The translations under genes and the position numbers were made by a program. The notes under the pieces were generated by a model. The model saw only the letters and a list, made by a program, of their open reading frames with translations. It did not search any database and had not been told where the DNA came from. A stretch of DNA of 64,000 nt from Haplodiscus bocki (taxonomy: Eukaryota): contig OZ296649.1 in the NCBI GenBank assembly GCA_965655095.1, forward strand, positions 95,666,001 through 95,730,000, in the 5' to 3' direction. Positions 1 through 31,199 of this stretch are shown here, in pieces (positions within the stretch are counted from its first letter, which is position 1; each line of letters begins with the position of its first letter).

Positions 1-2399
1 TTCAACCAATATTTATCTCTGCACACGCAGAAGGCAGAATTCACCCGAATATAAAAAATGTTTTCTTTTGAACAAAATTTTGTGGACAAAGTAATCCTCC
101 CCGAGCATCAGATGCCGTTCAAAATTTTTTTGACCGACGTAATACTTAGTATCTCCAACGTTTTGATGCTACTATTGATTCCGATGATACACTAGAATCG
201 TATAGTTTTGTTAATATAAATCGCTCACTAAGTTTCAGCTCTCCAAAACAGACTAAAGGAACTGAAAGTCTACAAAAACTGGACATAGATTACCACATTG
301 TAAAGTGTGTTGATTTCACAATTTTCTATGCTCATCCAATTCCAGTTTTTCAGGCAGAAATTACGTATCAAACCTCCATTTCTTCCTTTGTTTTTCCTAG
401 ACTTTTATTTGACTTTGATCCTAGTGAAACTTCCGCACATGGTAAATTGACCCTCTATAAAACATGTTCAAATGTAACTTATCCATCTTCCTTCTGGTTC
501 TTCCACCCTACTTCACTAAAAATTTACCAACTACACACGTCGATAACCTCCTTTTGTTTTTGAGAGCAACTCACCAAATCCAAATCAACTATCAATGATA
601 GATGAAAAAGACTTTAAAAAACGTCTTGATGTGCGCCTGAATCCAGTTGCTGATTGTAGCGCAACTCCGCCAGATGTTGCCAGTAAAAATGCACTGTAGG
701 CCTATATAGAAGAGCTAACGCAACAATATACACAAGAATAAGATTATTTCTCTCATATAACAAACACACAGAACATTGCGGATAAATTGCTAACTCGAAC
801 AATTTTCATGACAACCAAAGAAAGCTAATATCAAAACTTAAATCTTTGATAATATGCTGTTATCTGCAGCGACTGTCAAAATGTTGTACGTGATTTTTTG
901 GATTTTCCCAAGAAAAAGCTAACAGAACTGTCGAACCTCCTAAACCAAATGCTTTCCCAACAGCTTCCGATCAACGAGAACCGTCAAGAAAATTTCAAGT
1001 CAAAATTCAAGCAACTGCGTTTGATCAAGATAATTATTGAGTTTTGGTATATTTGGTCATTAAAAAAGGTACTAACTCTGCTTTGAAGTGAACAAACTCC
1101 AGTTTCGACAAAGTTGCTTTGGGGGCATAAAGTAACCTTTTTTACGGCACGATGTCTAGTAGTAGGAAAGAGAAGTTGTTTCGTTCTTATGGAAATGGCT
1201 TCGCGGTGGTTACAAAAGTGCCAACATTATCTTTCACCTTTCATGTAGAACCTAAAAGTGGTCAAACACATTTGTTTGCTACACAAAACGCTAGTGATAC
1301 TAACCAAGCTAATCATATTTCATCAGAGCCTGATGGAAATGATACTTGGCTGTCAATAACAAAACCAGTGAAAAAACCCTCCAACTTGTTTTAAACCTTC
1401 ATATGTTCAAAGTAATATTCAACCAATATTTATCTCTGCACACGCAGGAGGCAGAATTCACCCGAATATAAAAAATGTTTTTTTTTGAACAAAATTTTGT
1501 GGACAAAGTAATCCTCCACCGAGCATCAAATGCCGTTCAAAAATATTTTGACCGACGTAATACTTAGTATCTCCAACTTTTTGATGCTACTATTGATTCC
1601 GATGATACACTAGAATCGTAGAGTTTTGTTAATAAAGATCGCTCACTAAGTTTCAGCTCTGCAAAACAGAATGAAGGAACTGAGAGTCTACAAAAACCGG
1701 ACATATATTACCACTTTGTAAAGTGTTTTGATTTCACAATTTTCTACGCTCATCCAATTCCATTTTTTCAGCCAGAAATTACGTATCAAACCTTCATTTC
1801 TTCCTCTGTTTTTCCTAGACATATATTTGATTTTGATCCTGTTGAAACTTCCGCACATGGTAAATTGACCCTCTATAAAACATGTTCAAATGTAACTTAT
1901 CCATCTTCCTGCTGGTTCTTCGACCCTACTTCACTAAAAATTCACCAACTACACACGTCGATAACCTCCTTGGGTTTTCCAGAGCAACTCACCAAATCCA
2001 AATCAACTATCAATGATAAATGAAAAAGACTTTAAAGAACGTCTTAATGTGCGCCTCAATCGAGTTGCTGATTGTAGCGCAACTCCGCAAGATGTTGCCA
2101 GTGAAAATGCACTGTACGCATATATATAAGAGCTGACGCAACAATATACACAAGATTACGATTATTTCTCTCATATAAAAAACACACAAAACATTGCAAA
2201 TAAAACGCTGACTCGAACAATTTTCATGACAAACAAAGAAAGCTAAAATCAAAACATAAAACTTTGATAAGATGCTGTTAGCTGCAGCGACTGTCAAATT
2301 CTTGTACGCAGTTTTTCTGATCTTCCCAAGAAAAAGTTAACAGAGCTGTCGAACCTCCTAAACCAAAATCCTTTCCAACAGCTTCCGATCAACAAGAAC

Positions 2400-5300
2400 C
2401 GTCAAGAAAAGTTCAAGTCAAAGTTCAAGCAACTGCGTTTGATCAAGATAAACATTGAGTTTTGGTATATTTGGTCAATAAAAGGTGTACTAACTCTGCT
2501 TTGAAGTGAACAAACTCCAGTTTTGACAAAGTTGCAATGAACCTAAAGTAACCTTCCTTTTTTACGGCACGATGTCTAGTAGTAGGAAACAGAAGTTATT
2601 TCGTTCTTATCGAAAAGGCTTCGCGGTGGTTGCAAAAGTGCCAACATTATCTTTCACCTTTTTTTTTACTCACAGAGTAAAATAAGAGACAACACCCATT
2701 GTTTTCAAAATCAATCTTTCATGTAGAACCTAAAAGTGGTCGAACACATTTGTTTGCTACAAAAACCGCTCGTGATAATAACCAAGCTAATCATATTGCA
2801 TCAAAGCCTGATGGAAATGATATATGGCTTTCAATACCAACACCAGTGGAAAAGACCCTCCAACTCGTTTTAAACATTCATGAGTTCGAAGTAAATTTCA
2901 ACTAATAATTATCTCTGCACACGCAGAAGGCAGAATTCACCCGAATCAAAAAATAGGTTTTTTGAACAAATTTTTGTGGACAAAGTGTTCCTCCCCCGAA
3001 CATCAAATGCCCTTCAAATTTTTTTTCACCGACATAATACTTAGTATCTCCAATCTTTCGATGCTACTATTGATTTCGATGATACACTAGAATCGTATAG
3101 TTTTGTTAATAAAAATCGCTCACTGAGTTTCAGCTCTCCAAAACAGACTGAAGGAACTGAAAGTCTACAAAAACCGCACATAGATTACCACTCTGTAAAG
3201 TTTGTTGATTTCACAATTTTCTATGCTCATCCAATTCCAGTTTTTCAGCCAGAAATTACGTATCAAACATTCATTTCTTCCTTTGTTTTTCCTAGACCTA
3301 TATTTGACGTTGATCCTGTTGAAACTTCCGCAAATGTTAAATTGACCCTCTATAAAACATGTTCAAATGTAACTTATCCATCTTCCTTCTGGTTCTTCCA
3401 CCCTACTTCACTAAAAATTTACCAGCTACACACGTCGTTAACCTCCTTGGGTTTTCCAGAGCAACTCACCAAAACCAAATCAACTATCAATGATAGATGA
3501 AAAAGACTTTAAAGAACGTCTTGATGTGCGCCTCAATCGAGTTGCTGATTGTAGCGCAACTCCGCCAGATGTTGCCAGTAAAAATGCACTGTAGGCCTAT
3601 ATATAAGAGCTGACGCAACAATATACACAAGATTACGGTTATTTCTCTCATATAACAAACACACAGAACATTGCGGATAAAACGCTAACTCGAACAATTT
3701 TCATGACAACCAAGGAAAGCTAATATCAAAACTTAATTCTTTGATAATATGCTGTTAGCTGCAGCGACTGTCAAAATCTTGTACGTGATTTTTTGGATTT
3801 TCCCTGGAAAAAGTTAACAGAACTGTCGAACCTCCTAAACCAAATGCCTTCCCAACAGCTTCCGATCAACGAGAACCGTCAGGAAAAGTTCAAGTCAAAA
3901 TTCAAGCAACTGCGTTTGATCAAGATAATTATTGTCTTTTGGTATATTTGGTCCTTAAAAAACGTACTAACTCTGCTTTGAAGTGAACAAACTCCAGTTT
4001 TGACAAAGTTGCATTGGGGGCCTAGAGTAACTTTTTTTACGGCACGATGTCTAGTAGTAGGAAAGAGAAGTTTTTTCGATCTTATCGGAATGGCTTCGCG
4101 GTGGTTACAAAAGTGCCAACATTATCTTTCACCTTTCATGTAGAAACTAAAAGTGGTCGAACACATTTGTTTGCTACACAAAACGCTAGTTATAATAGCC
4201 AAGCTAATCCTATTGCATCAGAGCCTGATGGAAATGATAATTGGCTTTCAATACCAACACCAGTGGAAAAGACCCTCCAACTCGTTTTAAACCTTCATGA
4301 GTTCGAAGTAAATTTCAACTAAAAATTATCTCTGCACACGCAGAAGGCAGAATTCACCCGAATCAAAAAATAGGTTTTTTTAACAAATTTTTGTGGACAA
4401 AGTATTCCTCCCCCGAACATCAAATGCCCTTCAAAAAGTTTTTGACCGACATAAAACTTAGTATCTCCAATTTTTCGATGCTACTATTGATTTCGATGAT
4501 ACACTAGAATCGTATAGTTTTGTTAATAAAAATCGCTCACTAAGTTTCAGCTCTCCAAAACAGACTGAAGGAACTGAAAGTCTACAAAAACCGGACATAG
4601 ATTACCACTTTGTAAAGTGTGTTGATTTCACAGTTTTCTATGCTCATCCAATTCCAGTCTTTCAGCCAGAAATTACGTATCAAACCTTCATTTCTTCCTC
4701 TGTTTTTCCTAGACTTATATTTGATTTTGATCCTGTTGAAACTTCCGCACATGGTAAATTGACCCTCTATAAAACATGTTCAAATGTAACTTATCCATCT
4801 TCCTGCTGGTTCTTCGACCCTACTTCACTAAAAATTCACCAACTACACACGTCGATAACCTCCTTGGGTTTTCCAGAGCAACTCACCAAATCCAAATCAA
4901 CTATCAATGATAGATGAAAAAGACTTTAAAAAACGTCTTGATGTGCGCCTCAATCGAGTTGCTGATTGTAGCGCAACTCCGCAAGATGTTGCCAGTAAAA
5001 GTGCACTGTAGGCCTATATATATAAGAGCTGACGCAACAATATACACAAGATTACGATTATTTCTTTCATATAACAAACACAAAGAACATTGCGGATAAA
5101 ATGCTAACTCGAACAATTTTCATGACAACCAAAGAAAGCTAATATCAAAATTTAAATCTTTGATAATCTGCTGTTAGCTGCAGCGACTGTCAAAATCTTG
5201 TACGTGACTTTTTGGATCTTCCCAAGAAAAAGTTAACAGAGCTGTAGAAAATCCTAAACCAAATTCCTTTCCAACAGCTTCCGATCAACGAGAACCGTCA

Positions 5301-12900: not shown

Positions 12901-15239
12901 TTTTAAACCTTCATAAGTTCGAAGTAAATTTCAACCAATAATTATCTCTGCACACGCAGAAGGCAGAATTCACCCGAACAAAAAAATAGGTTTTTTGAAC
13001 AAACTTTTGTGGACAAAGTATTCGTCCCCCGAACAACAAATACCCTTCACAAATTTTCTGACTGACATAATACTTAGTATCTCCAACCTTTCGATGCTAC
13101 TTTTGATTTCGATGATACACTAGAATCGTATAGTTTTGTTAATAAAAATCGCTGACTAAGTTTCAGCTCTCCAAAACAGACTGAAGGAAATGAAAGTCTA
13201 CAAAAACCGAACTTAGATTACCACTTTGTAAAGTGTGTTGATTTCACAATTTTCTATGCTCACCCAATTCCAGTTTTTCAGCCAGAAATTACGTATCAAA
13301 CCTTCAATTCTTCCTTTGTTTTTCCTAGACTTACATTTGACTTTGATCCTGTTGAAACTTCCGCACATGGTAAATTGACCCTCTATAAAACATGTTCAAA
13401 TGAAACCTATCCATCTTCCTTCTGGTTCTTCCACCCTATTTCACTAAAAATTCACCAACTACACACGTTGATAACCTCCTTGGGTTTTCCAGAGCAACTC
13501 ACCAAATCCAAATCCACTATCAATTATAGATGAAAAAGACTTTAAAAAACGTCTTGTTGTGCGCCTCAATCGAGTTGCTGATTGTAGCGCAACTCCGCCA
13601 GATGTTGCCAGTAAAAATGCACTGTAGGCCTACATATAAGAGCTGACGCAACAATATACACAAGATTACGATTATTTTTTTCATGTAACAAACACACAAA
13701 ACATGGCGGATAAAACGCTAACTCGAGCAATTTTCATGACAACCAAAGAAAGCTAATATCAAAATTTAAATCTTTGATAATCTGCTGTTAGCTGCAGCGA
13801 CTGTCAAAATCTTGTACGTGACTTTTTGGATCTTCCCAAGAAAAAGTTAACAGAGCTGTAGAAAATCCTAAACCAAATTCCTTTCCAACAGCTTCCGATC
13901 AACGAGAACCGTCAAGAAAAGTTCAAGTCAAAGTTCAAGCAACTGCATTTGATCAAGATAAACATTGAGTTTTGGTATATTTGGTCAATAAAAAATGTAC
14001 TAACTCTGCTTTGAAGTGAACAAACTCCAGTTTTGACAAAGTTGCATTGGGGGCCTAAAATAACCTTTTTTACGGCACGATGTCTAGTAGTAGGAAAGAG
14101 AAGTTGTTTCGTTCTTATCGAAACGGCTTCGCGGTGGTTACAAAAGTGCCAACATTATCTTTCACCTTTCATGTAGAAACTAAAAGTGGTCGAACACATT
14201 TGTTTGCTACACAAAACGCTAGTGATACTAACCAAGCTAATCATATTGCATCAGATTCTGATGGAAATGATATTTGGCTGTCAATACCAACACCAGTGGA
14301 AAAGACCCTCCAACTCGTTTTAAACCTTCATAAGTTCGAAGTAAATTTTACCTAATAATTATCTCTGCACACGCAGAAGGCAGAATTCACCCGAATAAAA
14401 AAATAGGTTATTTGAACAAATTCTTGTGGACAAAGTATTCCTCCCCCGAGCATCAAATGCCGTTCAAAAACTTTTTGACCGACGTAAAACTTAGTATCTC
14501 CAATCTTTTGATGCTACTATTGATTCCGATGATACACTAAAATCGTATAGTTTTGTTAATAAAGATCCTTCACTGAGTTTCAGCTCTGCAAAACAGAATG
14601 AAGGAACTGAAATTCTACAAAAACCGGACAGAGATTACCACTTTGTAAAGTGTGTTCAATTAACATTTTTCTATGCTCATCCAATTCCGGTTTTTCAGCC
14701 AGAATTTACGTATCAAACCTTCGTTTATTCCTTTGTTTTTCGTAGACTTATGTTTGACTTTGATCCTGTTGAAACTTCCGCACATGGTAAATTGACCCTT
14801 TAAAAAACATGTTCAGAAGTAAATTATCCATTTCCCTTCTGGGTCTTCCACTCTACTTCACTGAAAATTCACCAACTACACACGTCGATAACCTCCTTGG
14901 GTTTTCCAGAGCAACTCACCAAATCCAAATCAACTATCAATGATAGATGAAAAAGACTTTAAAAACGTCTTGATGTGCGCCTCAATCGAGTTGCTGATTG
15001 TAGCGCAACTCCGCAAGATGTTGCCAGTAAAAGTGCACTGTAGGCCTATATATATAAGAGCTGACGCAACAATATACACAAGAATACGATTATTTCTCTC
15101 ATATAATAAACACACAAAACATTGCGGATAAAACGCTAACTCGAACATTTTTCATGACAACCAAAGAAATCTAATATCAAAATTTAAATCTTTGATAATA
15201 CGCTGTTAGCTGCAGCGAGTGTCAAAATCTTGTACGTAG

Positions 15240-17420
15240 TTTTTTGGATCAACCCAGGAAAAAGTTAACAGAACTGTCGAACCTCCAGAACCAAATGCCT
15301 TTCCAATAGCTTCCGATCAACGAGAACCGTCAAGAAAACTTCAAGTCAAAATTCAAGCAAATGCGTGTGATCAAGATACTTATTGAGTTTTGGTCTACAA
15401 CCATCAACCCAAACAGAACACACGGATACCTGTGGCTTCACGAAATAAACACCCATTCTGTAAAACACAATCAACTTTTATGTATTTTAACACTATCCTT
15501 CGGAAGTTACGGATCTCAAATACGCAAGTTCATAATCATTACACATACCATTATATTTTCTTTTTTCCGTGTCCTACCTTGTTTATACTCAAGCGATTAT
15601 TATGAACCAACTGGTTTTTTCCCCGGTTCAATACTTTGATTCCAAAAAGACATTTGTTTTATTCACTTTTCTCATCAACTTGACGAAGCTGCGACAGAAA
15701 GCAACAACCGAGACTGGGTAGAATCTTTCCCATAGGGACAAAGTATCCAAATTTTGGGCTTTTCTTAATCATTCACGTTTACCAAAAAACAAGATATAAA
15801 GTTTCACCAGAAATAATCTGTTTTTGCAACGAACCTTGACAATTCTTTAAAACTCAGTAAAACATGATCTTTGTCATATATCAATTTGGTTTTAATACTC
15901 ATACCGGTTCAACGGAATAGCAAAAAAGTATTGGTAGCCCTATAGACTGACACACGAAAGGAAAATTTGAAAACGATTTGAAAATTAATTACTGTTGATG
16001 TTCGCGGTAAAAAAGTTCAACAAATGATGGATATGCTCAGCGTTATAGATCAAAACTCAAGTGTTAGATTTGGAACATTGGACATAAGTGCATCTTTTCA
16101 CTCAAAAGTTGTTTCCCCTGTGAACTTGTTTAATGAAATCAAGACGACTAGTTAAAAAATATACTAACTCTGTTCTGAAGTGAACAAACTCCAGTTTTGA
16201 CAAAATTTTATTGGGCCTAAAGTAACCTTTTTTAAGGAACGATGTCTAGTAATAGGAAAAAGAAGTTATTTCTTTCTTATCGAAATGGCTTCGCGGTGGT
16301 TACAAAAGTGCCAACATTATCTTTCATCTTTTTTTACTCACAAAGAAAAATGGGAGACAACACCCATTGTTTTCAAAATCAAACTTTCATGTGGAACCTA
16401 AAAGTGGTCGAACACGTTTGTTTGCTGAACAAAACGCTAGTGATAATAACCAAGCTAATCATATTGCATCAGAGCCTGATGGAAATGATACCTGGCTGTC
16501 AATAACAACACCAGTGGAATAGACCCTTCAACTCGTTTTAAACCTTCATAAGTTCGAAGTAAATTTCAACCAATAATTATCTCTGCACACGCAGAAGGCA
16601 GAATTCACGCGAATATAAAAAAGGTTTCTTGAACAAAATCTTGTGGACAAAGTATTCCTCCCACGAACATCAAATGCCGTTCAAAAAATTTTTGACCGAC
16701 ATAAAACTTAGTATCTCCAATCTTTCGATGCTACTATTGATTCCGATGATACACTAGAATCGTATAGTTTTGCTAATAAAGATCGCTCACTAAGTTTCAG
16801 CTCTGCAAAACAGACTGAGGAACTGAACGTCTACAAAAACCGGACATAGATTACCACTTTGTAACGTGTGTTCATTTAACAATTTTCTATGCTTTTCCAA
16901 TTCCAGTTTTTCAGCCTGAAATTACGTATCAAACCTTCAATTCTTCCTTTGTTTTTCCTAGACTTACATTTGACTTTGATCCTGTTGAAACTTCCGCACT
17001 TGGTAAATTGACCTTCTATAAAACATGTTCAAAAGTAACTTATCCATCTCCCTTCTGGTTCTTCCACCCTACTTCACTAAATATTTACCAGCTACACATG
17101 TCGATAACCTCCTTGGGTTTTCCAGAGCAACTCACCAAATCCAAATCAACTATCAATGATAGATGAAACAGACTGTAAAAAACGTCTTGATGTGCGCCTC
17201 AATCGAGTTGCTGATTGTAGCGCAACTCCGCAAGATGTTGCCAGTAAAAATGCACTGTAGGCCTATATATAAGAGCTGAGGAAACAATAGACACAAGATT
17301 ACGATTATTTCTCTCATATAACAAACACACAAAACATTGCGGATAAGACGATAACTCGAACAATTTTCATGACAACCAAAGAAAGCTAATATCAAAACCT
17401 AAATCTTTGATAATATGCTG
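15240..17420 (+). mobile_element. Representative long monomer: decayed, internally deleted Penelope-like retroelement (RT + GIY-YIG) relic
   Basis: Frameshift-tolerant reading across copies gives collinear PLE-like motifs: LIPVQGNSKKELVARW (~LRPI..S..LAKW); SVIDQNSSVRFGTLD..(S)FT (~SFDV.SLFT); KLFRSY.NGFAVVTKVPTL (~YKQ.DG.AMGSPL.PTL); THEEK..TPIVFK...CR...NTFVC (~FKP.FY.RYVDDTFV); ILHQSLMEM (~LHP.L.FTME); WKRPSNS (~YRKPT); EFTRI..F.EQNFVDKV; LVLPPYF; HCRPIYIRA...IYTRLR (~C...YIG.T...TR..EH); KHTEHCG; KLKSLII (~LESL.I). Catalytic residues are degenerate. Confidence 0.62.
15395..16151 (+). repeat. ~757-bp segment found only in long monomers (copy 1); PLE N-terminal/RT fingers region
   Basis: Lies between gagttttggt and ttaaaaaatatactaactctg. 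Shorter monomers have about 11 nt (atatttggtca) in its place. Confidence 0.9.
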
Positions 17421-17609
17421 TTAGCTGCAGTGAGTGTCAAAATTTTGTACGTGATTTTTTGGATCTTCCCAGGAAAGAGTTAACAGAACTGTCAAACCTC
17501 ATAAACCAAATGCCTTTCCAACAGCTTCCGATCAACGAGAACCGTCAAGAAAAATTCAAGTCAAGATTCAAGCAACTGCGTTTGATCAAGATAATTATTG
17601 AGTTTTGGT

Positions 17610-18365
17610 CTACAACCATCAACCCAAATAGAACACACGGGTACCTGTAGCTTCACGAAATAAACACTCATTGTGTTAAAACACAATCAACTTTTATGTA
17701 TTTCAACACTATCATTCGGAAGTTACGGATCTCGAATCCGGAAGTTCATAATGATTACACATACCATTATATTTTCTTTTTTCCGTGTCCTACCTTGTTT
17801 AAAACCAAGCGATTATTGTGAACCAACTGCTTTTTTCCCCGGTTCAATACTTGATTCCAAAAAGACAATTGTTTTGTTCACTTTTCTCATCAACTTGAAG
17901 AAAATATGACAGAAAGCAACAACCGAGACTGGGTAGAATCTTTCTCAGAGGGACAAAGTATCCAAAATTTGCGCTTTTCTTAATCATTCACGTTTACCAA
18001 AAAACAAGATATAAAGTTTCACCAGAAATAATCTGTTTTTGCAACGAACCTTGACAATTCTTTAAAACTCAGTAAAACATGATCTTTGTCATATATCAAT
18101 TTGGTTTTAATACTCATACCGGTTCAACGGAATAGCAAAAAAGTATTGGTAGCCCTATAGACTGACACACGAAAGGAAAATTTGAAAACGATTTGAAAAT
18201 TAATTACTGTTGATGTTCGCGGTAAAAAAGTTCAACAAATGATGGATATGCTCAGCGTTATAGATCAAAACTCAAGTGTTAGGTTTGGAACATTGGACAT
18301 GCGTGCATCTTTTCACTCAAAGTTGATTCCACTGTGAACTTGTTTAATGAAATCAAGACGACTAG
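17610..18365 (+). repeat. Long-monomer segment, copy 2
   Basis: Same boundaries as 15395-16151, and near-identical to it over most of its 3' portion. Confidence 0.9.
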
Positions 18366-19519
18366 TTAAAAAATATACTAACTCTGTTTTGAAGTGAACA
18401 AACTCCAATTTTGACAAAGATGTATTTGGCTTAAAGTAACTTTTTTTACGGAACGATGTCTAGTAGTAGGAAACAGAGGATATTTCGTTCTTATCGGAAT
18501 GGCTTCGCGGTGGTTACAAAAGTGCCAACATTATGTTTCACCTTTTTTTACTCACAAAGAAAAGTGGGAGACAACACCCATTGTTTTCAAAATCAAACTT
18601 TCATCTGGAACCTAAAAGTGGTCGAACACGTTTGTTTGCTACAAAAAACGCTCGTGATAATAACCAAGTTAATCATATTGCATCAGAGCCTGATGGAAAT
18701 GATTATTGGCTTCGAATACCAACACCAGTGGAAAAGACCCTCCAACTCGTTTTAAACCTTCATAAGTTCGAAGTAAATTTCAACCAAGAAGTATCTCTGC
18801 ACACGCAGAAGGCAGAATTCACCCGATTTTAAAAAAGGTTTTTCGAACAAAAATTTGTGGACAAAGTATTTCTCCCCCGAACATCAAATGCCGTTCAAAA
18901 GTTTTTGACCGACATAATACTTAGCATCTCCAATATTTCGATGCTAGTATTGATTCCGATGGTACACTAGAATCGTATAGTTTTGTTAATAAAAATCGCT
19001 CACTAAGTTTCAGCTCTCCAAAACAGACTGAGGAACTGAAAGTCTACAAAAACCGGACATAGATTACCACTTTGTAACGTGTGTTCATTTAACAAATTTC
19101 TATGCTCTTCCATTTCCAGTTTTTCAGCCAGAAATTACGTATCAAACCTTCATTTCTTCCTTTGTTCTTCCTAGACTAATATTTGACTTTGATCCTGTTG
19201 AAATTTCCACACATGGTAAATTGACCCTCTAAAAAACATGTTCAAAAGTAATTTATCCATCTCTTTTCTGGTTCTTCAACCCTACTTCACTAAAAATTTA
19301 ACAACTACACAAGTCGATAACCTCCTTGGTTTTTCCAGAGCAACTCACTAAATCCAAATCAACTATCAATGATAGATGAAAAAGACTTTAAAGAACGTCT
19401 TGATGTGCGCCTCAATCGAGTTGCTGATTGTAGCGCAACTCCGCAAGATGTTGCCAGTGAAAATGCACTGTACGCCTATATATAAGAGCTGACGCAACAA
19501 CATACACAAGATTACGATT

Positions 19520-19797
19520 CTTGTTCTTCCACCCTACTTCACTCTGGTTCTTCCACCTTACTTCACTAAAAATTATTTAACAACTACACACGTCGATAAC
19601 CTCCTTGGTTTTTCCAGAGCAACTCACCAAATCCAAATCAACTATCAATGATAGATGAAACAGACTGTAAAAAACGTCTTGATGTGCGCCTCAATCGAGT
19701 TGCTGATTGTAGCGCAACTCCGCAAAATGTTGCCAGTAAAAATGCACTGTAGGCCTATATATAAGAGCTGACGCAACAATATACATAAGATTACGAT
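19520..19797 (+). repeat. ~277-bp internal duplication within one monomer, with a 24-bp stutter at the junction
   Basis: After attacgatt the sequence jumps back to ct(t/g)gttcttccacc(c/t)tacttcact, present twice, then re-reads about 250 bp. This explains the 1748-bp period. Confidence 0.9.
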
Positions 19798-22700
19798 TAT
19801 TTCTTTCAAATAACAAACGCATAAAACATTGCGGATAAAACGCTCACTCGAACAATTTTCATGACAACCAAAGAAAGCTAATATCAAAACTTAAATTTTT
19901 CATAATATGCTGTTAGCTGCAGCGACAGTCAAAATCTTGTATGTGATTTTTTGGATCATCCCAAGAAAAATATAACAGAGCTGTCGAACTTCCTAAACCA
20001 AATGCCTTTCGAACACCTTCCGATCAACGAGAACCGTCAAAGAAAAGTTGAATTCAAAATTCAAGCAACTGCGTTTAATCAAGATAATTATTGAGTTTTG
20101 GTATACCTGGTCAATAAAAAATGTACTAATTCTGCTTTGAAGTGAACAAACTCCAGTTTTGACAAAATTGCAGTGTGCCTAAAGTAACCTTTTTTATGGC
20201 ATGATGTCTAGTAGTACGAAAGAGAAGTTATTCCGCTCTTATGGAAATGGGTTCGCGGTGGTTTCAAAAGTGCCAAAAACATCTTTCACCTTTTTTGTAC
20301 TCACAAGGAAGAATAGGAGACAACACCCATTGTTTTCAAAATCAATCTTTCATGTAGAACCTATAAGTGGTCGAACACGTTTGTTTGCTACACAAAAGAG
20401 TAGTGATAAAAACCAAGCTAATCATACTGCATCAGAGCCTGATGGAAATGATATTTGGCTGTCAATAACAACACTAGTGGAACAGACCCTCCAACTAGTT
20501 TTAAACTTTCATAAGTTCGAAGTAACTTTCAACCAATATTTATCTCTGCACACGCAGAAGGCAGAATTCAACCGAATATAAAAAAGGTTTTTTCGAACAA
20601 AATTTTGTGGACAAAGTATTCCTCCCCCGAGCATCAAATGCCGTTCAAAAGTTTTTTGACCGACGTGATAATTAGTATCTCCAATCTTTTGATGCTACTA
20701 TTGATTCCGATGATACACTAGAATCGTATAGTTTTGTTAATAAAGATCGCTCACTAAGTTTCAACTCTGCAAAATAGACTGAAGGGACTGAAAATCTACA
20801 AAATCCGGACATAGATTACCACCTTGTAAAGTGTGTTCATTTAACAGTTTTCTATGCTCATCCAATTCCTGTTTTTCAGCCAGAAATTAGGTACCAAACC
20901 GTCATTTTTCCCTTGTTTTTCCTAGACTTATATTTGACTTTGATCCTGTTGAAACTTCCGCACATGGTAAATTGACCTTCTATAAAACATGTTCAAATGT
21001 AACTTATGCATCTTCCTTCTGGTTCTTCCACCCTACTTCACTAAAAATTTACCAACTACACACGTCGATAACCTCCTTGGGTTCTTCAGAGAAACTCACC
21101 AAATCCAAATCTACTATCAATGAAAGATGAAAAAGACTTTAAAAAACGTCTTGTTGTGCGCCTCAATCGAGTTGCTGATTGTAGCGCAACTCCGCCAGAT
21201 GTTGCCAGTAAAAATGCACTGTAGGCCTATATAAAAGAGCTGACGCAACAATATACAAAAGATTACGATTATTTCTTTCATATAAGAAACACACAAAACA
21301 TTGCGGATAAAACGCTAACTCGAACAATTTTCATGACAACCAAAGAAAGCTTACATCAAAACCTAAATCTTTGATAATATGTTGTTAGCTCCAGCGACTG
21401 TCAAAATCTTGTACGTGATTTTTTGGATCTTCCCAAGAAAAAGTTAACAGAACTGTCGAACCTCCTAAACCAAATGCCTTTCCAACAGCTTCCGATCAAC
21501 GAGAACCGTCAAAAAAAATTCAAGTCAAATATCAAGCAATTGCGTTTGATCAAGAGAAATATTGAGTTTTGGTATACCTGGTAAATGAAAAATGTACTAA
21601 CTCTGCTTTGAAGTGAACAAACTCCAGTTTTGAAAAAATTGCCTTGTGCCTAAAGTAACTTTTTTTATGGCATGATGTCTAGTAGTACGAAAGACAAGTT
21701 ATTTCGTTCTTATGGAATTAGGTTCGCGGTGGTTTCAAAAGTGCCAACTTTATCTTTCACCTTTTTTTTTACACACGAGGAAAAACAGGAGACAACACCC
21801 ATTGTTTTCAAAATCAATCTTTCATGTAGAACCCATAAGTGGTCGAACACGTTTGTTTGCTACACAAAACAGTAGTGATATTAACCATGCTAATCATATT
21901 GCATCAGAGCCTGATGGAAATGATATTTGGCTGTCAAAAACAACATCAGTGGAAAAGACCTTCCAATTCGTTTTAAACCTTCATAAGCTCGAAGTAACTT
22001 TCAACCAATAATTATCTCTGCAGACGCAGAAGGCAGAATTAACCCGAATATAAAAAAGGTTTTTTGAACAAAATGTTGTGGACAAAGTAATCCTCCCCCG
22101 AGCATCAAATGCCGTTCAAAAGTTTTTTGACAGACGTGATACTTAGTATCTCCAATCTTTTGATGCTACTATTGATTCCGATGATACACTAGAATCGTAT
22201 AGTTTTGTTAATAAAGACCGCTCACTAAGTTTCAGCTCTGCAAAATAGACTGAAGGAACTGAAAATCTACAAAATCCGGACATAAATTACCACATTGTAA
22301 AGTGTGTTCATTTAAGAATTTTCTATGCTCATCCAATTCCAGTTTTTAAGATAGAAACTACGTATCAAACCATCATTTCTTCCCTTGTTTTTCCTAGACT
22401 TATATTTCACTTTGATCCTGTTGAAACTTCCGCACATGGTAAATTGATCCTCTATAAAACATGTTCAGAAGTAACCTATCCATCCTCCTCCTGGTTCATC
22501 CACCCTACTTCACTAAAAATTTACCAGCTAGACACGTTGATAGCCTCCTTGGTTTTTCCGGAGCAACTCACCAAATCCAAATCAACTGTCAATGATAGAT
22601 GAAAAAGGCTTCAAAAAACGTCTTGATGTACGCCCTAATCGAGTTGCTGATTGTAGCGCAACTCCGCAAGATGTTGCCAGTAAAAATGCACTGTAGGCCT

Positions 22701-24516
22701 ATATATAAGAGCTGACGCAACAATATAGATAAGATTACGATTATCTCTTTCATATAACAAACACACAAAACATTGCGGATAAAACGCTAACTCGAACAAT
22801 TTTCATGACAACCAAAGAAAGCTAATATCAAAACTTAAATCTTTGATAATATGTTGTTAGCTCCAGCGACTGTCAAAATCTTGTACGTGATTTTTTGGAT
22901 CTTCCCAGGAAAAGGTTAACAGAACTGTCGAACCTCCTAAACCAAATGCCTTTCCAACAGCTTCCGATCAACGAGAACCGTCAAGAAAAGTTCAAGTCAA
23001 GATTCAAGCAACTGCGTTTGATCAAGATAATTATTGAGTTTTGGTATACCTGGTCAATAACAAAAACACTAACTCTGCTTTGAAGTAAACAAACTCCAGT
23101 TTTGACAAAATTGCATTGTGCCCAAAGTAACCTTTTTTATGGCAAGATGTCTAGTAGTACGAAAGAGAAGTTATTTCGTTCTTATGGAAATGGGTTCGCG
23201 GTGGTTTCAAAAATGACAACATTATCTTTCACTTTTTTTTACTCACAAGGAAAAATAGGAGACAACACCCACTGTTTTCAAAATCAATCTTTCATGTAGA
23301 ACCTAAAAGTGGTCGAACACATTTGTTTGCTACACAAAACGCTAGTGATGATAACCAAGCTAATCATTTTGCGTCAGAGCCTGATGCAAATGATATTTGG
23401 CTGTCAATAACAACACCACTGGAAAAGACCCTCCAACTCGTTTTAAACCTTCATAAGTTCGCAGTAAATTTCAACCAATAATTATCTCTGCACACGCAGA
23501 AGGCAGAATTCACCCGAAGATAAAAAACGTTTTTTCGAACAAAATTTTGTGGACAAAGTGTTCCTCCCCCGAACATCAAATGCCGTTCAAAAGTTGTTTG
23601 ACCGTTGTAATACTTAATATCTCCAATATTCTGGTGCTACTATTGATTCCGATGATACACTAGGATCGAATAGTTTTGTTAATAAAGATCGCTCACTAAG
23701 TTTCAGCTCTGCAAAACAGACTGAACGAACTGAAAACCTACAGAATCCGGACATAGATTACCACTTGGTAAAGTGTGTTTATTTAACAATTTTCTTTGCT
23801 CATCCAATTCCAGTTTTTCAGCCAGAAATTACGTATCAAACCTTCATTTCTTGCCTTGTTTTTCCTAGACTTATATTTGACTTTGATCCTGTTGAAACTT
23901 CCGCACATGGTAAATTGACCCTCTATAAAACATGTTCAAATGCAACTTATCCATCTTCCTTCTGGTTCATCCACCCTACTTCACTAAAATTTCACCAATT
24001 ACACACGTCGATAACCTCCTTGAGTTTTCCAGAGCAACTCACCATATCCAAATCAACTATCAATGATAGATGAAAAATACTTTGAAGAACGTCTTGATGT
24101 GCGCCTCAATCGAGTTGCTGATTGTAGCGCAACTCCGCCAGATGTTGCCAGTAAAAATGCACTGTAGGCCTACATATAAGAGCTGACGCAACAATATACA
24201 CAAGATTACGATTATTTTTTTCATGTAACAAACACACAAAACATGGCGGATAAAACGGTAACGCAAGTAATTTCATTGACAGCCAAAGAAAGCTAATATC
24301 AAAACCTAAAACTTTGATAATATGCTGTTAGCTGCAGCGACTGTCAAAATCTTGTACGTGATTTTTTGGATCTTCCCAAAAAAAAGTTAACATAATTGTC
24401 GAACCTCCTAAACCAAATGCCTTTCCAACAGCTTCCGATCAACGAGAACCGTCAAGAAAAGTTCAAGTCAAGATTCAAGCAACTGCGTTTGATCAAGATA
24501 ATTATTGAGTTTTGGT

Positions 24517-25271
24517 CTACAACCATCAACCCAAATAGAACACACGGATACCTGTAGCTTCACGAAATAAACACCCATTGTGTAAAACACAATCAACTTT
24601 TATGTATTTTAACACTATTATTCGGAAGTTACGGATCTCAAATACGCAAATTCATAATGATTACACATACCATTATATTTTCTTTTTTCCGTGTCCTACC
24701 TTGTTTATACCCAAGCGATTCTTGTGAATCAACTGCTTTTTTCCCCCGTTCAATACTTTGATTCCAAAAAGACAATTGTTTTGTCCACTTTTCTCATCAA
24801 CTTGAGGAAAATATGACAGAAAGCAACAACCGACATGGGTAGAATCTCTCCCAGAGGTACAAATTATCCAAATTTTGCTCTTTTCTTAATCATTCACGTT
24901 TACCAAAACACAGGATATACAGTTTTACCAGAAAAAATCTATTTTGCAACCAACCTTGACAATTCTTTAAAACTCAGTGAAACTAGATCCTTGTCATATA
25001 TCAATTTGGTTTTATTACTCATACCGGTTCAAGGGAATAGCAAAAAAGAATTGGTAGCCCGATGGACTGGCACATGAAAGGAAAATTTGAAAACGATTTG
25101 AAAACTAATTACTGTTGATGTTCGTGGTAAAGAATTTCAACAAATGATGGATATGTCCAGCGTTATAGATCAAAACTCAAGTGTTAGGTTTGGAACATTG
25201 TACATGCGTGCATCTTTTCACTCAAAAGTTGATTCCACTGTGAACTTGTTTAATGAAGTCAAGACGACTAG
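24517..25271 (+). repeat. Long-monomer segment, copy 3
   Basis: Same boundaries. ORF 24835 is nearly identical to ORF 30000 in copy 4. Confidence 0.9.
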
Positions 25272-28200
25272 TTAAAAAATATACTAACTCTGTTTTGAAG
25301 TGAACAAACTCCAGTTTTGACAAAGTTGTATTTGGCTTCTTTAAAAAAACCTTTTTTACGGAACGATGTCTAGTAGTAGGAAACAGAAGTTATTTCTTTC
25401 TTATCGAAATGGCTTCGCGGTGGCTACAAAAGTGCCAACATTATCCTTCACCTTTTTTTTACTCACAAAGAAAAATAGGAGACAACACCCATTGTTTTCA
25501 AAACCAAACTTTCATGTGGAACCTAAAAGTGGTCGAACACATTTGTTTGCTACACAAAACACTCGTGATAATAACCAAGCTAATCATAATGCACTAGAGC
25601 CTGATGGAAATGATTATTGGCTTTCAATACCAACACCAGTGGAAAAGACCTCCAACTCGTTTTAAACCTTCATATGTTCGAAGTAAAATTCAACCAATAA
25701 TTATCTCTGCACACGCAGAAGGCAGAATTCACGCGAATATAAAAAAGGTTTCTTGAACAAAATCTTGTGGACAAAGTATTCCTCCCCCGAACATCAAATG
25801 CCGTTCAAAAATTTTTTGACCGACGTGATACTTAGTATCTCCAATCTTTGATGCTACTATTGATTCCGATGATACACTAGAATCGTATAGTTTTGTTAAT
25901 AAAGATCGCTCACTAAGTTTCAGCTCTCCAAAACAGGCTGAAGGAATTGAAAGTCTACAAAAATAGGACAAAGGTTACCACTTTGTAAGGTGTGTTGTTT
26001 CCACATTTTTCTATGCTCATCCAGTTCCAGTTTTTCAGCCAGAAATTACGTATCAAACCTTCATTTATTCCTTTGTTTTTAACAGACTTATATTTGACTT
26101 TGACCCTGTTGATACTTCCGCACATTGTAAATTGACCCTCTATAAAACGTTTTCAAATGTAAATTATCCATCTTCCTTCTGGTTCTTCCACCCTGCTTCA
26201 CTAAAGATTCACCAGCCACACACGTCGATAACCTCGTTGGGTTTTCCAGAGCAACTCACCAAATCCAAATCAACTATCAATGATAGATGAAAAAGACTTT
26301 AAAGAACGTCTTGATGTGCGCCTCAACCGAGTTGCTGATTGTAGCGCAACTCCGCCAGATGTTGCCAGTAAAAATGCACTGTAGGCCTATATATAAGAGC
26401 TGACGCAGCAATATACACAAGATTACGATCATTTCTCTCATATCACCAACACACAAATCATTGCAGATAAAACGCTAACTGGAACAATTTTCATGACAAC
26501 CAAAGAAAGCTAATATCAAAAATTAAATCTTTGATAATATGCTGTTAGCTGCAGTGACTGTCAAAATCTTGTACGTGATTTTTTGGATCTTCCCAAGAAA
26601 AAGTTAAAAGAAATGTCGAACCTCCTAAAACAAATGCCTTTCCAACAGCTTCCGATCAACGAGAAGCGTCAAGAAAAGTTCAATTCAAAATTCAAGCAAC
26701 TGCGTTTGATCAAGATAATTATTGAGTTTTGGTAAATTTGGTCATTAGAAAATGTACTAACTCTGCTTTGAAGTGAATAAACACCAGTTTTGTCAAAGTT
26801 GCATTGGGCCTAAAGTAACCTTTTTTACGGCACGATGTCTAGTAGTAGGAAGGAGAAGTTATTTCGTTCTTGTCGAAATGGCTTCGCGGTGGTTACAAAA
26901 GTGCCAACATTATCTTTCACCTTTTTTTTACTCGCAAAGGATAAAAAGAGACAACACCCATTGTTTTCAAAATCAATCTTTCATGTAGAACCTAAAAGTG
27001 GCCGAACACATTTGTTTGCTACAAAAAACGCTCGTGATAATAAACAAGCTAATCATTTTGCATCAGATTCTGATGGAAATGATATTTGGCTGTCAATACC
27101 AACACCAGTGGAAAAGAGCCTCCAACTCGTTTTAAACCTTCATAAGTTCGAAGTAAATTTCAACCAATAATTATCTCTGCAACGCAGAAGGCAGAATTCA
27201 CCCGATTATGAAAAAGGTTTTTTGGAACAAAAGTTTGTGGACAGAGTATTCTCCCCCGAGCATCAAATGCCGTTCAAAAAATTTTTTGACCGACGTAATA
27301 CTTAGTATCTCCAATCTTTTGATGCTACTGTTGATTCCGATGATACACTAGAATCGTATAGTTTTGTTAAGAAAAATCGCTCACTAAGTTTCAGCTCTTC
27401 AAAACAGACTGAAGGAACTGAAAGTCTACAAAACCCGGACATAGATTACCAGTTTGTAAAATGTGTTGATTTCACAATTTTCTAGGCTCATCCAAATCCA
27501 GTTTTTCAGCCAGAAATTACGTATCAAACCTTCATTTCTTCCTTTGTTTTTCCTAGACTTTTAATTGACTTTGACCCTGTTGAAACTTCCGCACATGGTA
27601 AATTGACCCTCTATAAAACATGTTCAAATGTAACTTATCCATCTTCCTTCTGGTTCTTCCACCCTACTTCACTAAAAACTTACCAGCTACACACGTCGAT
27701 AGCCTCCTTGTGTTTTCCAGAGCAAGTCACCAAATCCAAATCAACTATCAATGAAAGATGAAAAAGACTTTAAAGAACGTCTTGATGTGCGCCTCAATCG
27801 AGTTGCTGATTGTAGCGCAACTCCGCCAGATGTTGCCAGTAAAAATGCTTTGTAGGCCTATATATAAGAGCTGACGCAGCAATATACACAAGATTACGAT
27901 GATTTCTCTCATATCACCAACACACAAATCATTGCGGATAAAACGCTAACTGGAACAATTTTCATGACAACCAAAGAAACCTAATATCAAAACTTAAATC
28001 TTTGATAAGATGCTGTTGGCTGCAGCGACTGTCAAAATCTTGTACGCAATTTTTCTGAGCTTCCCATGAAAAAGTTAAAAGAACTGTCGAACCTCCTAAA
28101 ACAAATGCCTTTCCAACAGCTTCCGATCAACGAGAAGCGTCAAGAAAAGTTCAATTCAAAATTCAAGCAACTGCGTTTGATCAAGATAATTATTGAGTTG

Positions 28201-29680
28201 TGGTAAATTTGGTCATTAGAAAATGTACTAATTCTGCTTTGAAGTGAATAAACACCAGTTTTGTCAAAGTTGCATTGGGCCTAAAGTAACCTTTTTTACG
28301 TCACGATGTCTAGTAGTAGGAAGGAGAAGTTATTTCGTTCTTGTCGAAATGGCTTCGCGGTGGTTACAAAAGTGCCAACATTATCTTTCACTTTTTTTTT
28401 ACTCACAAAGGAAAAAAAGAGACAACACCCATTGTTTTCAAAATCAATCTTTCATGTAGAACCTAAAAGTGGTCGAACACATTTGTTTGCTACAAAAAAC
28501 GCTCGTGATAATAACCAAGCTAATCATTTTGCATCAGAGCCTGATGGAAATGATAATTGGCTGTCAATAACAACACCAGTGGAAATGACCCTCCAACTCG
28601 TTTTAAACCTTCATAAGTTCGAAGTAAATTTCAACCAATATTTATCTCTGCAACGCAGAAGGCAGAATTCACCCGATTATGAAAGAGGTTTTTTGGAACA
28701 AAAGTTTGTGGACAGAGTATTCTCCCCCGAGCATCAAATGCCGTTCAAAAAATTTTTTGACCGACGTAATACTTAGTATCTCCAATCTTTTGATGCTACT
28801 GTTGATGCCGATGATACACTAGAATCGTATAGTTTTGTTAAGAAAAATCGCTCACTAAGTTTCAGCTCTTCAAAACAGACTGAAGGAATTGAAAGTCTAC
28901 AAAACCCGGACATAGATTACCAGTTTGTAAAATGTGTTGATTTCACAATTTTCTAGGCTCATCCAAATCCAGTTTTTCAGCCAGAAATTACGTATCAAAC
29001 CTTCATTTCTTCCTTTGTTTTTCCTAGACTTTTATTTGACTTTGACCCTGTTGAAACTTCCGCACATGGTAAATTGACCCTCCATAAAACATGTTCAAAT
29101 GTAACTTATCCATCTTCCTTCTGGTTCTTCCACCATACTTCACTAAAAACTTACCAGCTACACACGTCGATAGCCTCCTTGTGTTTTCCAGAGCAAGTCA
29201 CCAAATCCAAATCAACTATCAATGATAGATGAAAAAGACTTTAAAAAACGCGCCTCAATTGATGTGCACCTCAATCGAGTTGCTGATTGTAGCGCAACTA
29301 CGCAAGATGTTGACAGTAAAAATGCACTGTAGGCCTATTTATAAGAGCTGACGCAGCAATATACACAAGATTACGATCATTTCTCTCATATAACAAACAT
29401 ACAAAACATTGCGGATAAAACGCTAACTCGAACAATTTTCATGACAACCAAAGAAAGCTAATATGAAAATTAAATCTTTGATAATATGCTGTTAGCTGCA
29501 GCGACTGTCAAAATCTTGTACGTGATTTTTTGAATCTTCCCAAGAAAAAGTTAACAGAACTGTCGAACCTCCTAAACCAAATGCCTTTCCAACAGCTTCC
29601 GGTCAACGAGAACCGTCAAGAAAAGTTCAAGTCAGAAATCAAGCAACTGCGTTTGATCAAGATAATTATTGAGTTTTGGT

Positions 29681-30436
29681 CTACAACCACCAACCCAAAC
29701 AGAACACACGGATATCTGTACCTTAACGAAATAAATACCCATTGTGTTAAAACACAATCAACTTTTATGTATTTTAACACTATCATTCGGAAGTTACGGA
29801 TCTCAAATACGCAAGTTCATAATGATTACACATACCATTATATTTTCTTTTTTCCGTGTCCCACCTTGTTTATACTCAAGCGATTATTGTGAATCAACTG
29901 CTTTTTTCCCCCGTTCAATACTTTGATTCCAAAAAGACAATTGTTTTGTCCACTTTTCTCATCAACTCGAAGAAAATATGACAGAAAGCAACAACCGACA
30001 TGGGTAGAATCTCTCCCAGAGGTACAAAATATCCAAATTTTGCGCTTTTCTTAATCATTCACGTTTACCAAAATACAAGATATAAAGTTTTACCAGAAAA
30101 AATCTATTTTGCAACCAACCTTGACAATTCTTTAAAACTCAGTGAAACTAGATCCTTGTCATATATCAAGTTGGTTTTATTACTCATACCGGTTCAAGGG
30201 AATAGCAAAAAAGAATTGGTAGCCCGATGGACTGGCACATGAAAGGAAAATTTGAAAACGATTTGAAAACTAATTACTGTTGATGTTCGTGGTAAAAAAT
30301 TTCAGCAAATGATGGATATGTCCAGCGTTATAGATCAAAACTCAAGTGTTAGGTTTGGAACATTGTACATGCGTGCATCTTTTCACTCAAAAGTTGATTC
30401 CACTGTGAAATCGTTTATTGAAATCAAGACGACAAG
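29681..30436 (+). repeat. Long-monomer segment, copy 4
   Basis: Same boundaries; closest to copy 3. Confidence 0.9.
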
Positions 30437-31199
30437 TTAAAAAATATACTAGCTGTGCTTTGAAGTGAACAAACTCCAGTTTTGACAAAGTTGTGTTGGG
30501 CTTAAAGTAACCATTTTTACGGAACGATGTCTAGTAGTAGGAAACAGAAGTTATTTCGTTCTTATCGAAATGGCTTCGCGGTGGTTACAAAAGTGCCAAC
30601 ATTATCTTTCAACTTCTTTTACTCACAAAGAAAAATAAGAAAGAACACCCATTGCTATTAAGATCAATCTTTCATGTAGAACCTAAAAGTGGTCGAACAC
30701 ATTTGTTTGCTACACAAAACGCTAGTGATAATAACCAAGTTGATCATAATGCAACAGAGCCTGATGGAAATGATAATTGGCTTAGAATTCACCCGAATAG
30801 AAAAAAAAGGTTTTTTGAACAAAATTTTGTGGACAAAGTATTCCTAAGGAACCCTTAGAGTCCTTTGTAAAACGTTACGCTATGATTTTTTTTCACGATA
30901 GCATTCCAACTACCGAAGAAAATAGAAACCTTTGCAGTCTCGTGGGACAATCCAAATGGGAATAGGAACAACGAATCTCATTTGAACATTGAACAAATGT
31001 TTCACGGAAACGATTCAAAGCAATGCCGGTTAACGCATTTGCATGGCTTTTTATATCCTAACAAAATGTGGCTTTTGTTATGCAAAACACAATTTTCTCT
31101 TTTGCAGCTACAACACTCAGGTACATTGACACTCAGGTACAATTTCTCGCAGTCTTGTTAACGTCATCAAGAGGAATCAGTCTAAAACAAACAGTAAGC

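What the first reader, a model, noticed from the sequence alone, without database searches (positions are those of the whole stretch)
1..30845. A >30-kb macrosatellite whose monomer appears to be a dead Penelope-like retroelement
Seen: about 19-20 similar tandem monomers. Seen, read with frameshifts: roughly ten degenerate motifs in PLE order (N-terminal region, RT motifs, thumb, linker LPY, C..YIG-like endonuclease, terminal ESL.I). Known: PLEs often insert as partial head-to-tail tandems. Inference: all copies share the same crippling lesions, so the element decayed first and the fossil was then amplified at the DNA level. The monomer junction fuses the endonuclease end directly to the ORF N-terminal region, with no pLTR visible. 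A tandem PLE insertion may have seeded a satellite that could now be centromeric/heterochromatic or a small-RNA source.
Basis: partly seen in the sequence, partly recalled or inferred. Interest (0 to 1): 0.75.

Follow-up and report, generated by a model that had tools for sequence, protein, structure and literature searches.

The report
Satellite grown inside a dead retrovirus-like element
The tandem array is real, but its repeat unit is not a Penelope element: it is a 2.2-kb inner piece (end of pol plus most of the envelope gene) of one long-dead gypsy-type retrovirus-like element, copied about 50 times in place, which is an ordinary way for satellite DNA to arise.

Summary
The array is confirmed. 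Window 1-30845 holds 19 head-to-tail units that are 89-98% alike. Fifteen units are 1.41-1.75 kb and four are 2.2 kb. Two unit-specific 22-mers show that the array runs 45 kb further upstream. In total there are 50 units over about 76 kb, at a single locus in a 1.5-Gb genome. Short-read contig depth is 10-100 times that of the flank.

The Penelope reading fails. No RT or GIY-YIG signal appears on either strand.

The 2.2-kb unit is the ancestral form. It is collinear, at 65-70% DNA identity, with more than 40 dispersed copies of an 11-15-kb LTR retroelement. That element has:
- 310-bp TG...CA LTRs and a 4-bp target duplication;
- gag, RT, RNase H and integrase;
- an envelope gene of the Monjiviricetes/chuvirus class (PF24664).

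Each unit covers about 400 bp upstream of env plus env residues 1 to about 560. Right after the last unit, the window continues collinearly through the rest of env to the 3' LTR at 35300. The array therefore grew in place inside one element copy.

Stops and frameshifts shared by all units show that the fragment was already dead when it was amplified. The short units carry a 757-bp deletion.

This scan has noted similar single-locus arrays from other dead transposons in the same genome. No function is indicated.

The parts
1..30845 (+). Window part of the tandem array: 19 units. The whole array is about C2:95,620,500-95,696,845, 50 units, about 76 kb.
14345..16564 (+). Long unit of 2220 bp, the ancestral form. 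Positions 93-2217 are collinear with dispersed element copies. About 96-450 is the region upstream of env (tail of the pol-side ORF). From about 450-550 onward it is env residues 1 to about 560.
16565..18778 (+). Long unit (2214 bp)
23470..25688 (+). Long unit (2219 bp)
28630..30845 (+). Last unit, long form. It runs straight on into the unamplified rest of the element.
15394..16152 (+). 757-bp stretch (about env residues 170-385) kept in the four long units (also at 17609-18366, 24516-25272, 29680-30437) and deleted in the other 15 units.
19267..19798 (+). 279-bp internal tandem duplication inside unit 13
30846..31400 (+). Unamplified remainder of the env region of the host element copy, collinear with copy A 10311 to about 10815. 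The end coordinate is approximate.
31401..34980 (+). Post-env internal region of the host element copy, collinear with copies A-F at 67-69% identity. No Pfam domain.
34981..35300 (+). 3' LTR of the host element copy (TGGACTAA...TTAGTCCA). Every genomic match to the element ends at 35300.

Best explanation
One old, decayed copy of a Ty3/gypsy-order LTR retroelement carrying a chuvirus-type (Monjiviricetes class III) envelope gene suffered a tandem duplication of an internal segment of about 2.25 kb. The segment comprises some 400 bp upstream of env plus env residues 1 to about 560. Unequal exchange between the repeats then expanded the duplication in place to about 50 units (about 76 kb). A 757-bp deletion and a 54-bp deletion arose in units and spread as the array grew. 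The deleted form now makes up about 45 of the 50 units. The array is non-coding and most likely functionless. Shown: the array, its single locus, the identity of the parent, the collinear 3' continuation, and the shared lesions. Inferred: the mode of expansion (unequal crossing-over or replication slippage) and the lack of function.
For: Array and copy number.

The long unit is collinear over positions 93-2217 with more than 40 dispersed copies at 64-68% identity, with E down to 3e-196. It is collinear with six copies that I fetched.

Those copies belong to an 11.5-15-kb element with:
- 240-310-bp terminal direct repeats that begin TG and end CA, and a 4-bp ATAT duplication around copy F;
- Retrotrans_gag, RVT_1, RT_RNaseH (E 1.4e-12), rve (E 3.9e-7) and the integrase C-terminus, in that order, upstream of env;
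- a PF24664 fusion glycoprotein in the part homologous to the unit. One copy scores 32.9 bits (cut-off 27), and three others hit at E 1.6e-6 to 4.6e-5 at collinear profile positions 293-484.

Intact 727-749-aa env ORFs elsewhere in the genome score E 1e-49 against PF24664. They match the dispersed copies at E 1e-22 to 1e-27.

Open pieces of the dispersed copies match the four long units in order over positions 91-2205, with frame changes, at E 1e-9 to 1e-26.

Window 30787-35300 continues collinearly with copy A 10253-15540, including the 3' LTR.

In-frame stops are present in 19 of 19 units at several codons. Indels whose length is not a multiple of three are shared by at least 90% of units.
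Against: Direct matches of intact env proteins or of Pfam models to the window units are weak. tblastn gives E 0.001-0.007, my local profile gives E 0.02 at best, and PF24664 does not hit at E 0.1 or better. The link to env is therefore transitive, through the dispersed copies. The 5' flank of the array lies outside the window and could not be read, so embedding in one element copy is shown only on the 3' side. The host copy is only 64-73% identical to any other copy, which makes fine indel calls in the alignment uncertain. The read evidence comes from one study and may include the sample that was assembled.
Confidence: 0.9

Rival explanations
1. The unit is a dead Penelope-like element (RT plus GIY-YIG), seeded by a tandem PLE insertion.
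For: The unit junction does lack any LTR.
Against: There is no RVT_1 or GIY-YIG hit at E 0.1 or better in 89 + strand pieces or 63 - strand pieces. None of the 150 whole-genome GIY-YIG matches lies in the array. tblastn with this genome's GIY-YIG ORFs gives a best E of 0.036, outside the array. The unit matches another family far better. The unit is 1.4-2.2 kb, shorter than a PLE ORF (my knowledge).
Confidence: 0.02
2. The array is an assembly artefact: a collapsed or over-expanded repeat.
For: Long tandem repeats are hard to assemble, and no read that spans the array was available.
Against: The units differ by 2-11% and by four structural variants in a non-periodic order. Unit-specific contig depth is 10-100 times flank depth in four runs from two samples. 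Contig ends mark the same breakpoint at 30845 (table 7).
Confidence: 0.03
3. The array is a functional locus, for example a one-strand piRNA source against the still abundant env-bearing gypsy lineage, a chromosome-specific centromere or heterochromatin block, or a family of domesticated env genes.
For: All 50 units point the same way. The genome holds very many env ORFs of this class, many of them intact. The region is gene-poor.
Against: The units are full of shared stops and frameshifts, so they are not coding. The array sits at a single locus at 63% of a 151.7-Mb chromosome piece. The units are about 30% diverged even from their nearest dispersed relatives, which would make them poor guides against those copies. 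No RNA data are available. Other arrays of the same kind from unrelated transposons are noted in this genome, which fits a neutral process.
Confidence: 0.07
4. The array consists of whole LTR elements joined in tandem (LTR-internal-LTR-internal), as arises by recombination between elements.
For: Another locus, C8:88,304,738-88,321,482, shows three copies of part of this element about 6.5 kb apart.
Against: The unit here holds no LTR, gag or RT. The only LTR-like stretch in the window is at 34981-35300.
Confidence: 0.01

Closest known systems
Satellite or macrosatellite DNA born from an inner piece of a transposable element, e.g. tandem repeats derived from centromeric Ty3/gypsy retrotransposons (PMC3648361) and the review of TE-to-tandem-repeat conversion (PMC6947457)
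   Same: An inner, LTR-free fragment of an LTR retroelement was amplified head to tail at the DNA level. The units are non-coding, and unit variants spread through the array.
   Different: The source is the pol tail and env region of an animal element with a chuvirus-type envelope. The array is at one locus, is not centromere-associated as far as can be seen, and still sits inside its parent copy.
LTR retroelements that captured a Jingchuvirales (chuvirus) glycoprotein as env: Anakin/Pao in mosquitoes (PMC7642597) and Gypsy-associated glycoproteins in other arthropods (PMC10084718)
   Same: The parent family has LTRs and gag-RT-RNase H-integrase followed by a PF24664 glycoprotein gene.
   Different: The pol markers are of Ty3/gypsy type (RT_RNaseH, Integrase_p58_C, SH3_Tf2-1), with no Pao markers seen. 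The copy in the window is long dead, and only its env fragment was amplified.
Penelope-like elements
   Same: Both are retroelement-derived, and PLEs also occur as partial tandems.
   Different: The array has no RT or GIY-YIG signal, the unit size does not fit, and the unit matches another family.
Other single-locus macrosatellites noted by this scan in the same genome (from hAT, MULE, CR1/L2 LINE and a giant inverted transposon)
   Same: The architecture is the same: a 1.3-2-kb inner piece of one dead transposon copied 27-80 times in place (AI notes that I did not check).
   Different: The source element differs. This is the envelope region of an LTR retroelement.

Membership tests
Penelope-like element | PLE-type reverse transcriptase domain | tested here: not met
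   No RVT_1 hit at E 0.1 or better in 89 + strand and 63 - strand open pieces of the array. Pfam has no PLE-specific model, so this is a test with the general RT model.
Penelope-like element | C-terminal GIY-YIG endonuclease | tested here: not met
   No PF01541 hit in the pieces. The whole-genome six-frame scan gave 150 matches, none in C2:95.62-95.70 Mb. tblastn with the genome's own GIY-YIG ORFs gave a best E of 0.036, outside the array.
Penelope-like element | A single ORF of about 2.5-3 kb within the repeat unit | tested here: not met
   The units are 1.41-2.22 kb. The PLE ORF size is from my own knowledge.
Ty3/gypsy-order LTR retroelement with env (the parent of the unit) | Terminal direct repeats (LTRs) beginning TG and ending CA, with a short target duplication | tested here: met
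   Copy F has 310-bp repeats, 87% alike, TGGACTAA...TTAGTCCA, flanked by ATAT on both sides. Copy A has 242-bp repeats, 88% alike. The window 3' LTR ends at 35300.
Ty3/gypsy-order LTR retroelement with env (the parent of the unit) | gag and pol domains with RT and RNase H before integrase | tested here: met
   Copies D and F have Retrotrans_gag (E 1.2e-4), RVT_1 (5.8e-5), RT_RNaseH at D 5145-5597 (1.4e-12) and rve at D 6575-6889 (3.9e-7), with the integrase C-terminus next. This was not shown for the host copy itself, whose 5' part lies outside the window.
Ty3/gypsy-order LTR retroelement with env (the parent of the unit) | An env-like ORF between integrase and the 3' LTR | tested here: met
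   PF24664 hits in four dispersed copies at collinear profile positions. Intact relatives have the integrase-C ORF followed directly by a 727-749-aa PF24664 ORF.
Monjiviricetes/Jingchuvirales-type fusion glycoprotein (PF24664) | Profile match over the curated cut-off | tested here: inconclusive
   The feature is met for the parent family: copy D scores 32.9 bits against a cut-off of 27, and intact relatives score 137-169 bits. For the window units the direct signal is weak (E 0.001-0.02) but always at the expected unit position. Pfam gives no hit. The link is by DNA and protein homology to the dispersed copies.
Satellite DNA in the strict sense (multi-locus, centromeric or heterochromatic) | Arrays at many loci or at centromeres | tested here: not met
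   Both unit-specific 22-mers occur only at C2:95.62-95.70 Mb. Chromatin state is not testable here.
Macrosatellite (single-locus array of kb-sized units) | Tens of head-to-tail kb-sized units at one locus | tested here: met
   50 units of 1.4-2.2 kb over about 76 kb.

The most novel reading that the evidence does not exclude
This genome may have an unusually active, perhaps specific, process that turns inner pieces of single dead mobile elements into 50-90-kb arrays of 1.3-2.2-kb units. Candidate processes are reinsertion of rolling-circle-amplified circles or a replication-based mechanism. The scan has noted arrays of this kind from hAT, MULE, LINE and Polinton elements, and now from an LTR-element env. 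Such arrays, all in one orientation, might serve as small-RNA sources against the still abundant env-bearing gypsy lineage.
Probability: 0.1. Interest if true: 0.6.

Novelty: new member of a known kind. Interest (0 to 1): 0.3.

Why it matters
The result corrects an attractive but wrong family assignment. It also gives a very clean example of satellite birth. The array still sits inside its parent element, so the duplicated segment, its 3' breakpoint (window 30845) and the order of later deletions can be read directly. It shows that this genome carries a large family of gypsy-type elements with a chuvirus-class envelope. It adds one more case to a series of single-locus macrosatellites grown from dead mobile elements in the same genome, and that series may deserve study as a whole. 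Taken alone, the locus is ordinary and shows no sign of function.

Tried and rejected
- Pfam scan of all open pieces of the array on both strands. It found no RT, GIY-YIG or env hit, only scattered chance-level hits (L6_membrane, SAM_LFY and others at E above 5e-4).
- First Pfam scans of the long open pieces of dispersed copies A, D and F found nothing. Domains appeared only when shorter pieces were scanned.
- tblastn of intact env ORFs against the window at E 1e-3 or better found nothing. At looser thresholds it gave weak hits at the expected place.
- A local search profile built from seven intact natural env ORFs was used for one local search only. It gave weak hits (best E 0.02), and the top 14 all lay in the array at one unit position.
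- The ORF downstream of env in the intact relatives has no match in copies A-F or in the window.
- A search for the host copy's pol part upstream of the array, using copy A's pol region, listed 51 places and none near the array. The host copy is probably too diverged to rank.
I did not seek those letters by another route.
- A search for microhomology at the duplication breakpoints failed for lack of the 5' flank.
- No RNA runs were listed, so expression and small RNAs are untested.
- Copies were compared one by one instead.
- The large protein searches, structure prediction and complex prediction were not used, because the family scans had settled the identity.
Full report
**The observation.** Self-comparison of the window shows 19 head-to-tail units from position 1 to 30845, all on the + strand.
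- Ten units are 1414-1417 bp.
- Four units are 1470-1479 bp and carry 54 extra bases at unit position 1241.
- One unit is 1749 bp, with an internal 279-bp duplication at 19267-19798.
- Four units are 2153-2220 bp and carry 757 extra bases at unit position 1048.
- Pairwise identity is 89-98%, mean 91.6%, with no higher-order period. Only a few neighbours are closer, such as units 3 and 5 at 98% and units 9 and 10 at 97%.

**Extent and reality of the array.** The window is C2:95,666,001-95,730,000 of a 1.5-Gb genome. C2 is 151.7 Mb long. A 22-mer present in 18 units of the window has 51 matches in the genome at 1 mismatch or fewer. All lie on the + strand of C2 between 95,621,150 and 95,695,299, spaced 1.41-2.2 kb apart. 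A second 22-mer gives 50 matches in the same span at 2 mismatches or fewer. At 3 mismatches it adds only scattered single matches on other chromosomes. The array therefore has 50 units, spans about 76 kb, begins near C2:95,620,500, and is the only one of its kind in the genome.

Contigs from four public runs (two samples, one study) lie on the flank at depth 15-47. They lie on unit sequence at depth 150-5000, and on the 757-bp stretch at 26-135. Their loose ends mark the same breakpoint at 30845. An assembly artefact is unlikely.

**Where the unit comes from.** The short unit matches more than 35 dispersed places at 65-72% identity, but only over positions 95-1051. The long unit matches more than 40 places over positions 93-2217 without a break, with E down to 3e-196. 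The long form is therefore ancestral, and the short forms are deletion derivatives.

I fetched 20 kb around six dispersed copies, labelled A-F. They are 72-86% alike over 11-15 kb. They end in direct repeats of 240-310 bp:
- copy A: 3979-4220 and 15244-15483, 88% alike;
- copy F: 4130-4437 and 19052-19361, 87% alike.

The repeats read TGGACTAA...TTAGTCCA. Copy F is flanked by ATAT on both sides. A TGG follows the 5' repeat after two bases, as a primer-binding site would.

**What the parent encodes.** Open pieces of copies D and F hit Retrotrans_gag, RVT_1, RT_RNaseH, RT_RNaseH_2, rve and, weakly, the integrase C-terminal domains. In copy D the order along the DNA is as follows.

| Position in D | Domain | E-value |
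|---|---|---|
| 5145-5597 | RNase H | 1.4e-12 |
| 6575-6889 | integrase core | 3.9e-7 |
| 6878-7237 | integrase C-terminus | |
| 9298-9768 | PF24664 fusion glycoprotein | 2.3e-8 (32.9 bits, cut-off 27) |

Three other copies hit PF24664 at collinear profile positions 293-484.

The genome holds very many PF24664 frames: 4115 first-look candidates and more than 100 scored matches, many with open frames of 721-749 aa. In the best of them, an ORF with Integrase_p58_C and SH3_Tf2-1 domains is followed directly by an env ORF that scores E 1e-49. A language-model search places this env among the fusion glycoproteins of negative-strand RNA viruses. These intact proteins match copies A-F in order. The integrase C-terminus matches at E 1e-25. 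Env residues 230-670 match at E 1e-22 to 1e-27.

The parent is thus a Ty3/gypsy-order LTR retroelement with a chuvirus-class envelope. This kind is described in arthropods (PMC7642597, PMC10084718).

**What the unit is.** The long unit corresponds to copy A 8055 to about 10311. From the env alignments, env residue 1 falls near unit position 430-540 and the unit ends near residue 560 of about 730. The first 350-450 bases of the unit are the end of the ORF upstream of env. The 757-bp deletion in the short units removes about env residues 170-385.

Open pieces of copies A, C, D and F match the four long units in order from position 91 to 2205, with several frame changes, at E 1e-9 to 1e-26. Direct matches of intact env ORFs to the window are weak. 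tblastn gives E 0.001-0.007, and a local profile gives E 0.02. They always fall at the expected unit position, and they are the top hits among 1731 six-frame pieces of the whole window.

**The array sits inside one element copy.** After the last unit, window 30787-35300 runs on collinearly with copy A 10253-15540. It passes through the rest of env and a 3.5-kb region without domains, and ends in the 3' LTR at 35300. Every genomic match to this stretch ends at 35300.

At the junction, every unit reads ...GTATTCCT followed by CCCCCGAGCATC... (the unit start). The last unit reads ...GTATTCCT followed by AAGGAACCC... (the parental continuation). The array is therefore an in-place amplification of an inner segment, not a chain of insertions.

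The host copy is only 64-73% identical to its nearest relatives, so it is old.

**Dead before amplification.** I aligned the 19 units with the six dispersed copies. Projected onto the open frames of those copies, stop codons occur in 19 of 19 units at several codons, for example alignment columns 360, 432, 459, 1004, 1071 and 2076. At least ten indels whose length is not a multiple of three are shared by 90% or more of the units. At 65-70% identity, single indel calls are uncertain.

**The Penelope test.**
- No RVT_1 or GIY-YIG hit at E 0.1 or better in 89 + strand and 63 - strand open pieces.
- None of 150 whole-genome GIY-YIG matches lies in the array.
- The genome's own GIY-YIG ORFs do not match the array.
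- The unit is too short for a PLE ORF (my knowledge).

**Mechanism.** Shown: one segment, one locus, one orientation, a parental flank, and deletion variants that dominate the array (about 45 of 50 units). Inferred: a first duplication by illegitimate or microhomology-driven exchange, followed by growth and turnover by unequal sister-chromatid exchange or replication slippage. The 757-bp deletion arose early in a unit and was carried along. The mean divergence of 8.4% between units suggests the array is old. I give no date, because the mutation rate of this organism is unknown to me.

No function is indicated. The units cannot encode protein. The array lies about 25 kb from the 3' end of a MARK/Par-1-like kinase gene.

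**Context.** Notes from this scan describe several other single-locus arrays in the same genome, grown from inner pieces of a hAT, a MULE, a CR1/L2 LINE, a giant inverted transposon and Polinton-like elements. They also include first-reader remarks on chuvirus-like env genes. I did not check those loci. They suggest that such arrays are common here, which lowers the surprise of this one and raises a question about the genome as a whole.

**Limits.** No RNA data were available. No long reads were available.

Noticed in passing
G000, e.g. L035:1321-3513 (+), L036:1456-3702 (-), L037:1456-3636 (-), and many 721-aa frames listed: The genome holds a very large family of open PF24664 (chuvirus-class) envelope ORFs: 4115 first-look candidates, many with uninterrupted 721-749-aa frames. 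In the best hits the env ORF is preceded directly by a gypsy-type integrase C-terminus and followed by a 312-362-aa ORF with no Pfam match. This looks like a young, possibly active, env-bearing gypsy lineage.
   Followed up: partly
G000:C3:133.75-134.31 Mb, C4:117.5-117.8 Mb, C9:18.6-19.0 Mb, C11:74.9-75.1 Mb, C23: GIY-YIG domains lie inside very long open frames (2,691-2,780 aa). They are clustered and spaced about 15-17 kb apart on several chromosomes. This could be a giant GIY-YIG-bearing element or gene family arranged in tandem clusters. It is unrelated to the array.
   Followed up: no
G000:C8:88,304,738-88,321,482: Three copies of the pol-env part of the same parent element family lie about 6.5 kb apart in one orientation. 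This is a second, different tandem arrangement of this family.
   Followed up: no
window 60679-60807 (-): An exon encodes a KA1 domain (E 7e-20 in Pfam; 71 bits in the genome scan). KA1 is the C-terminal domain of MARK/Par-1-type kinases. The gene runs on the - strand, so its 3' end points towards the array, about 25 kb from the element's LTR.
   Followed up: partly
L029:2902-4418 (copy A, C11:82,531,901-82,533,417): A 760-bp tandem duplication, 98% alike, lies in the post-env region of dispersed copy A. It is a recent small duplication inside another copy of the family.
   Followed up: no
L024:1648-2396 (C5:34,728,147-34,728,895): A tandem array with a period of about 84 bp (82-93% alike) lies a few kb upstream of dispersed copy B.
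   Followed up: no
window 32001-34000: This stretch has a strongly negative GC skew (-0.44) in the post-env region of the host element. The strand is C-rich and has no Pfam domain.
   Followed up: no
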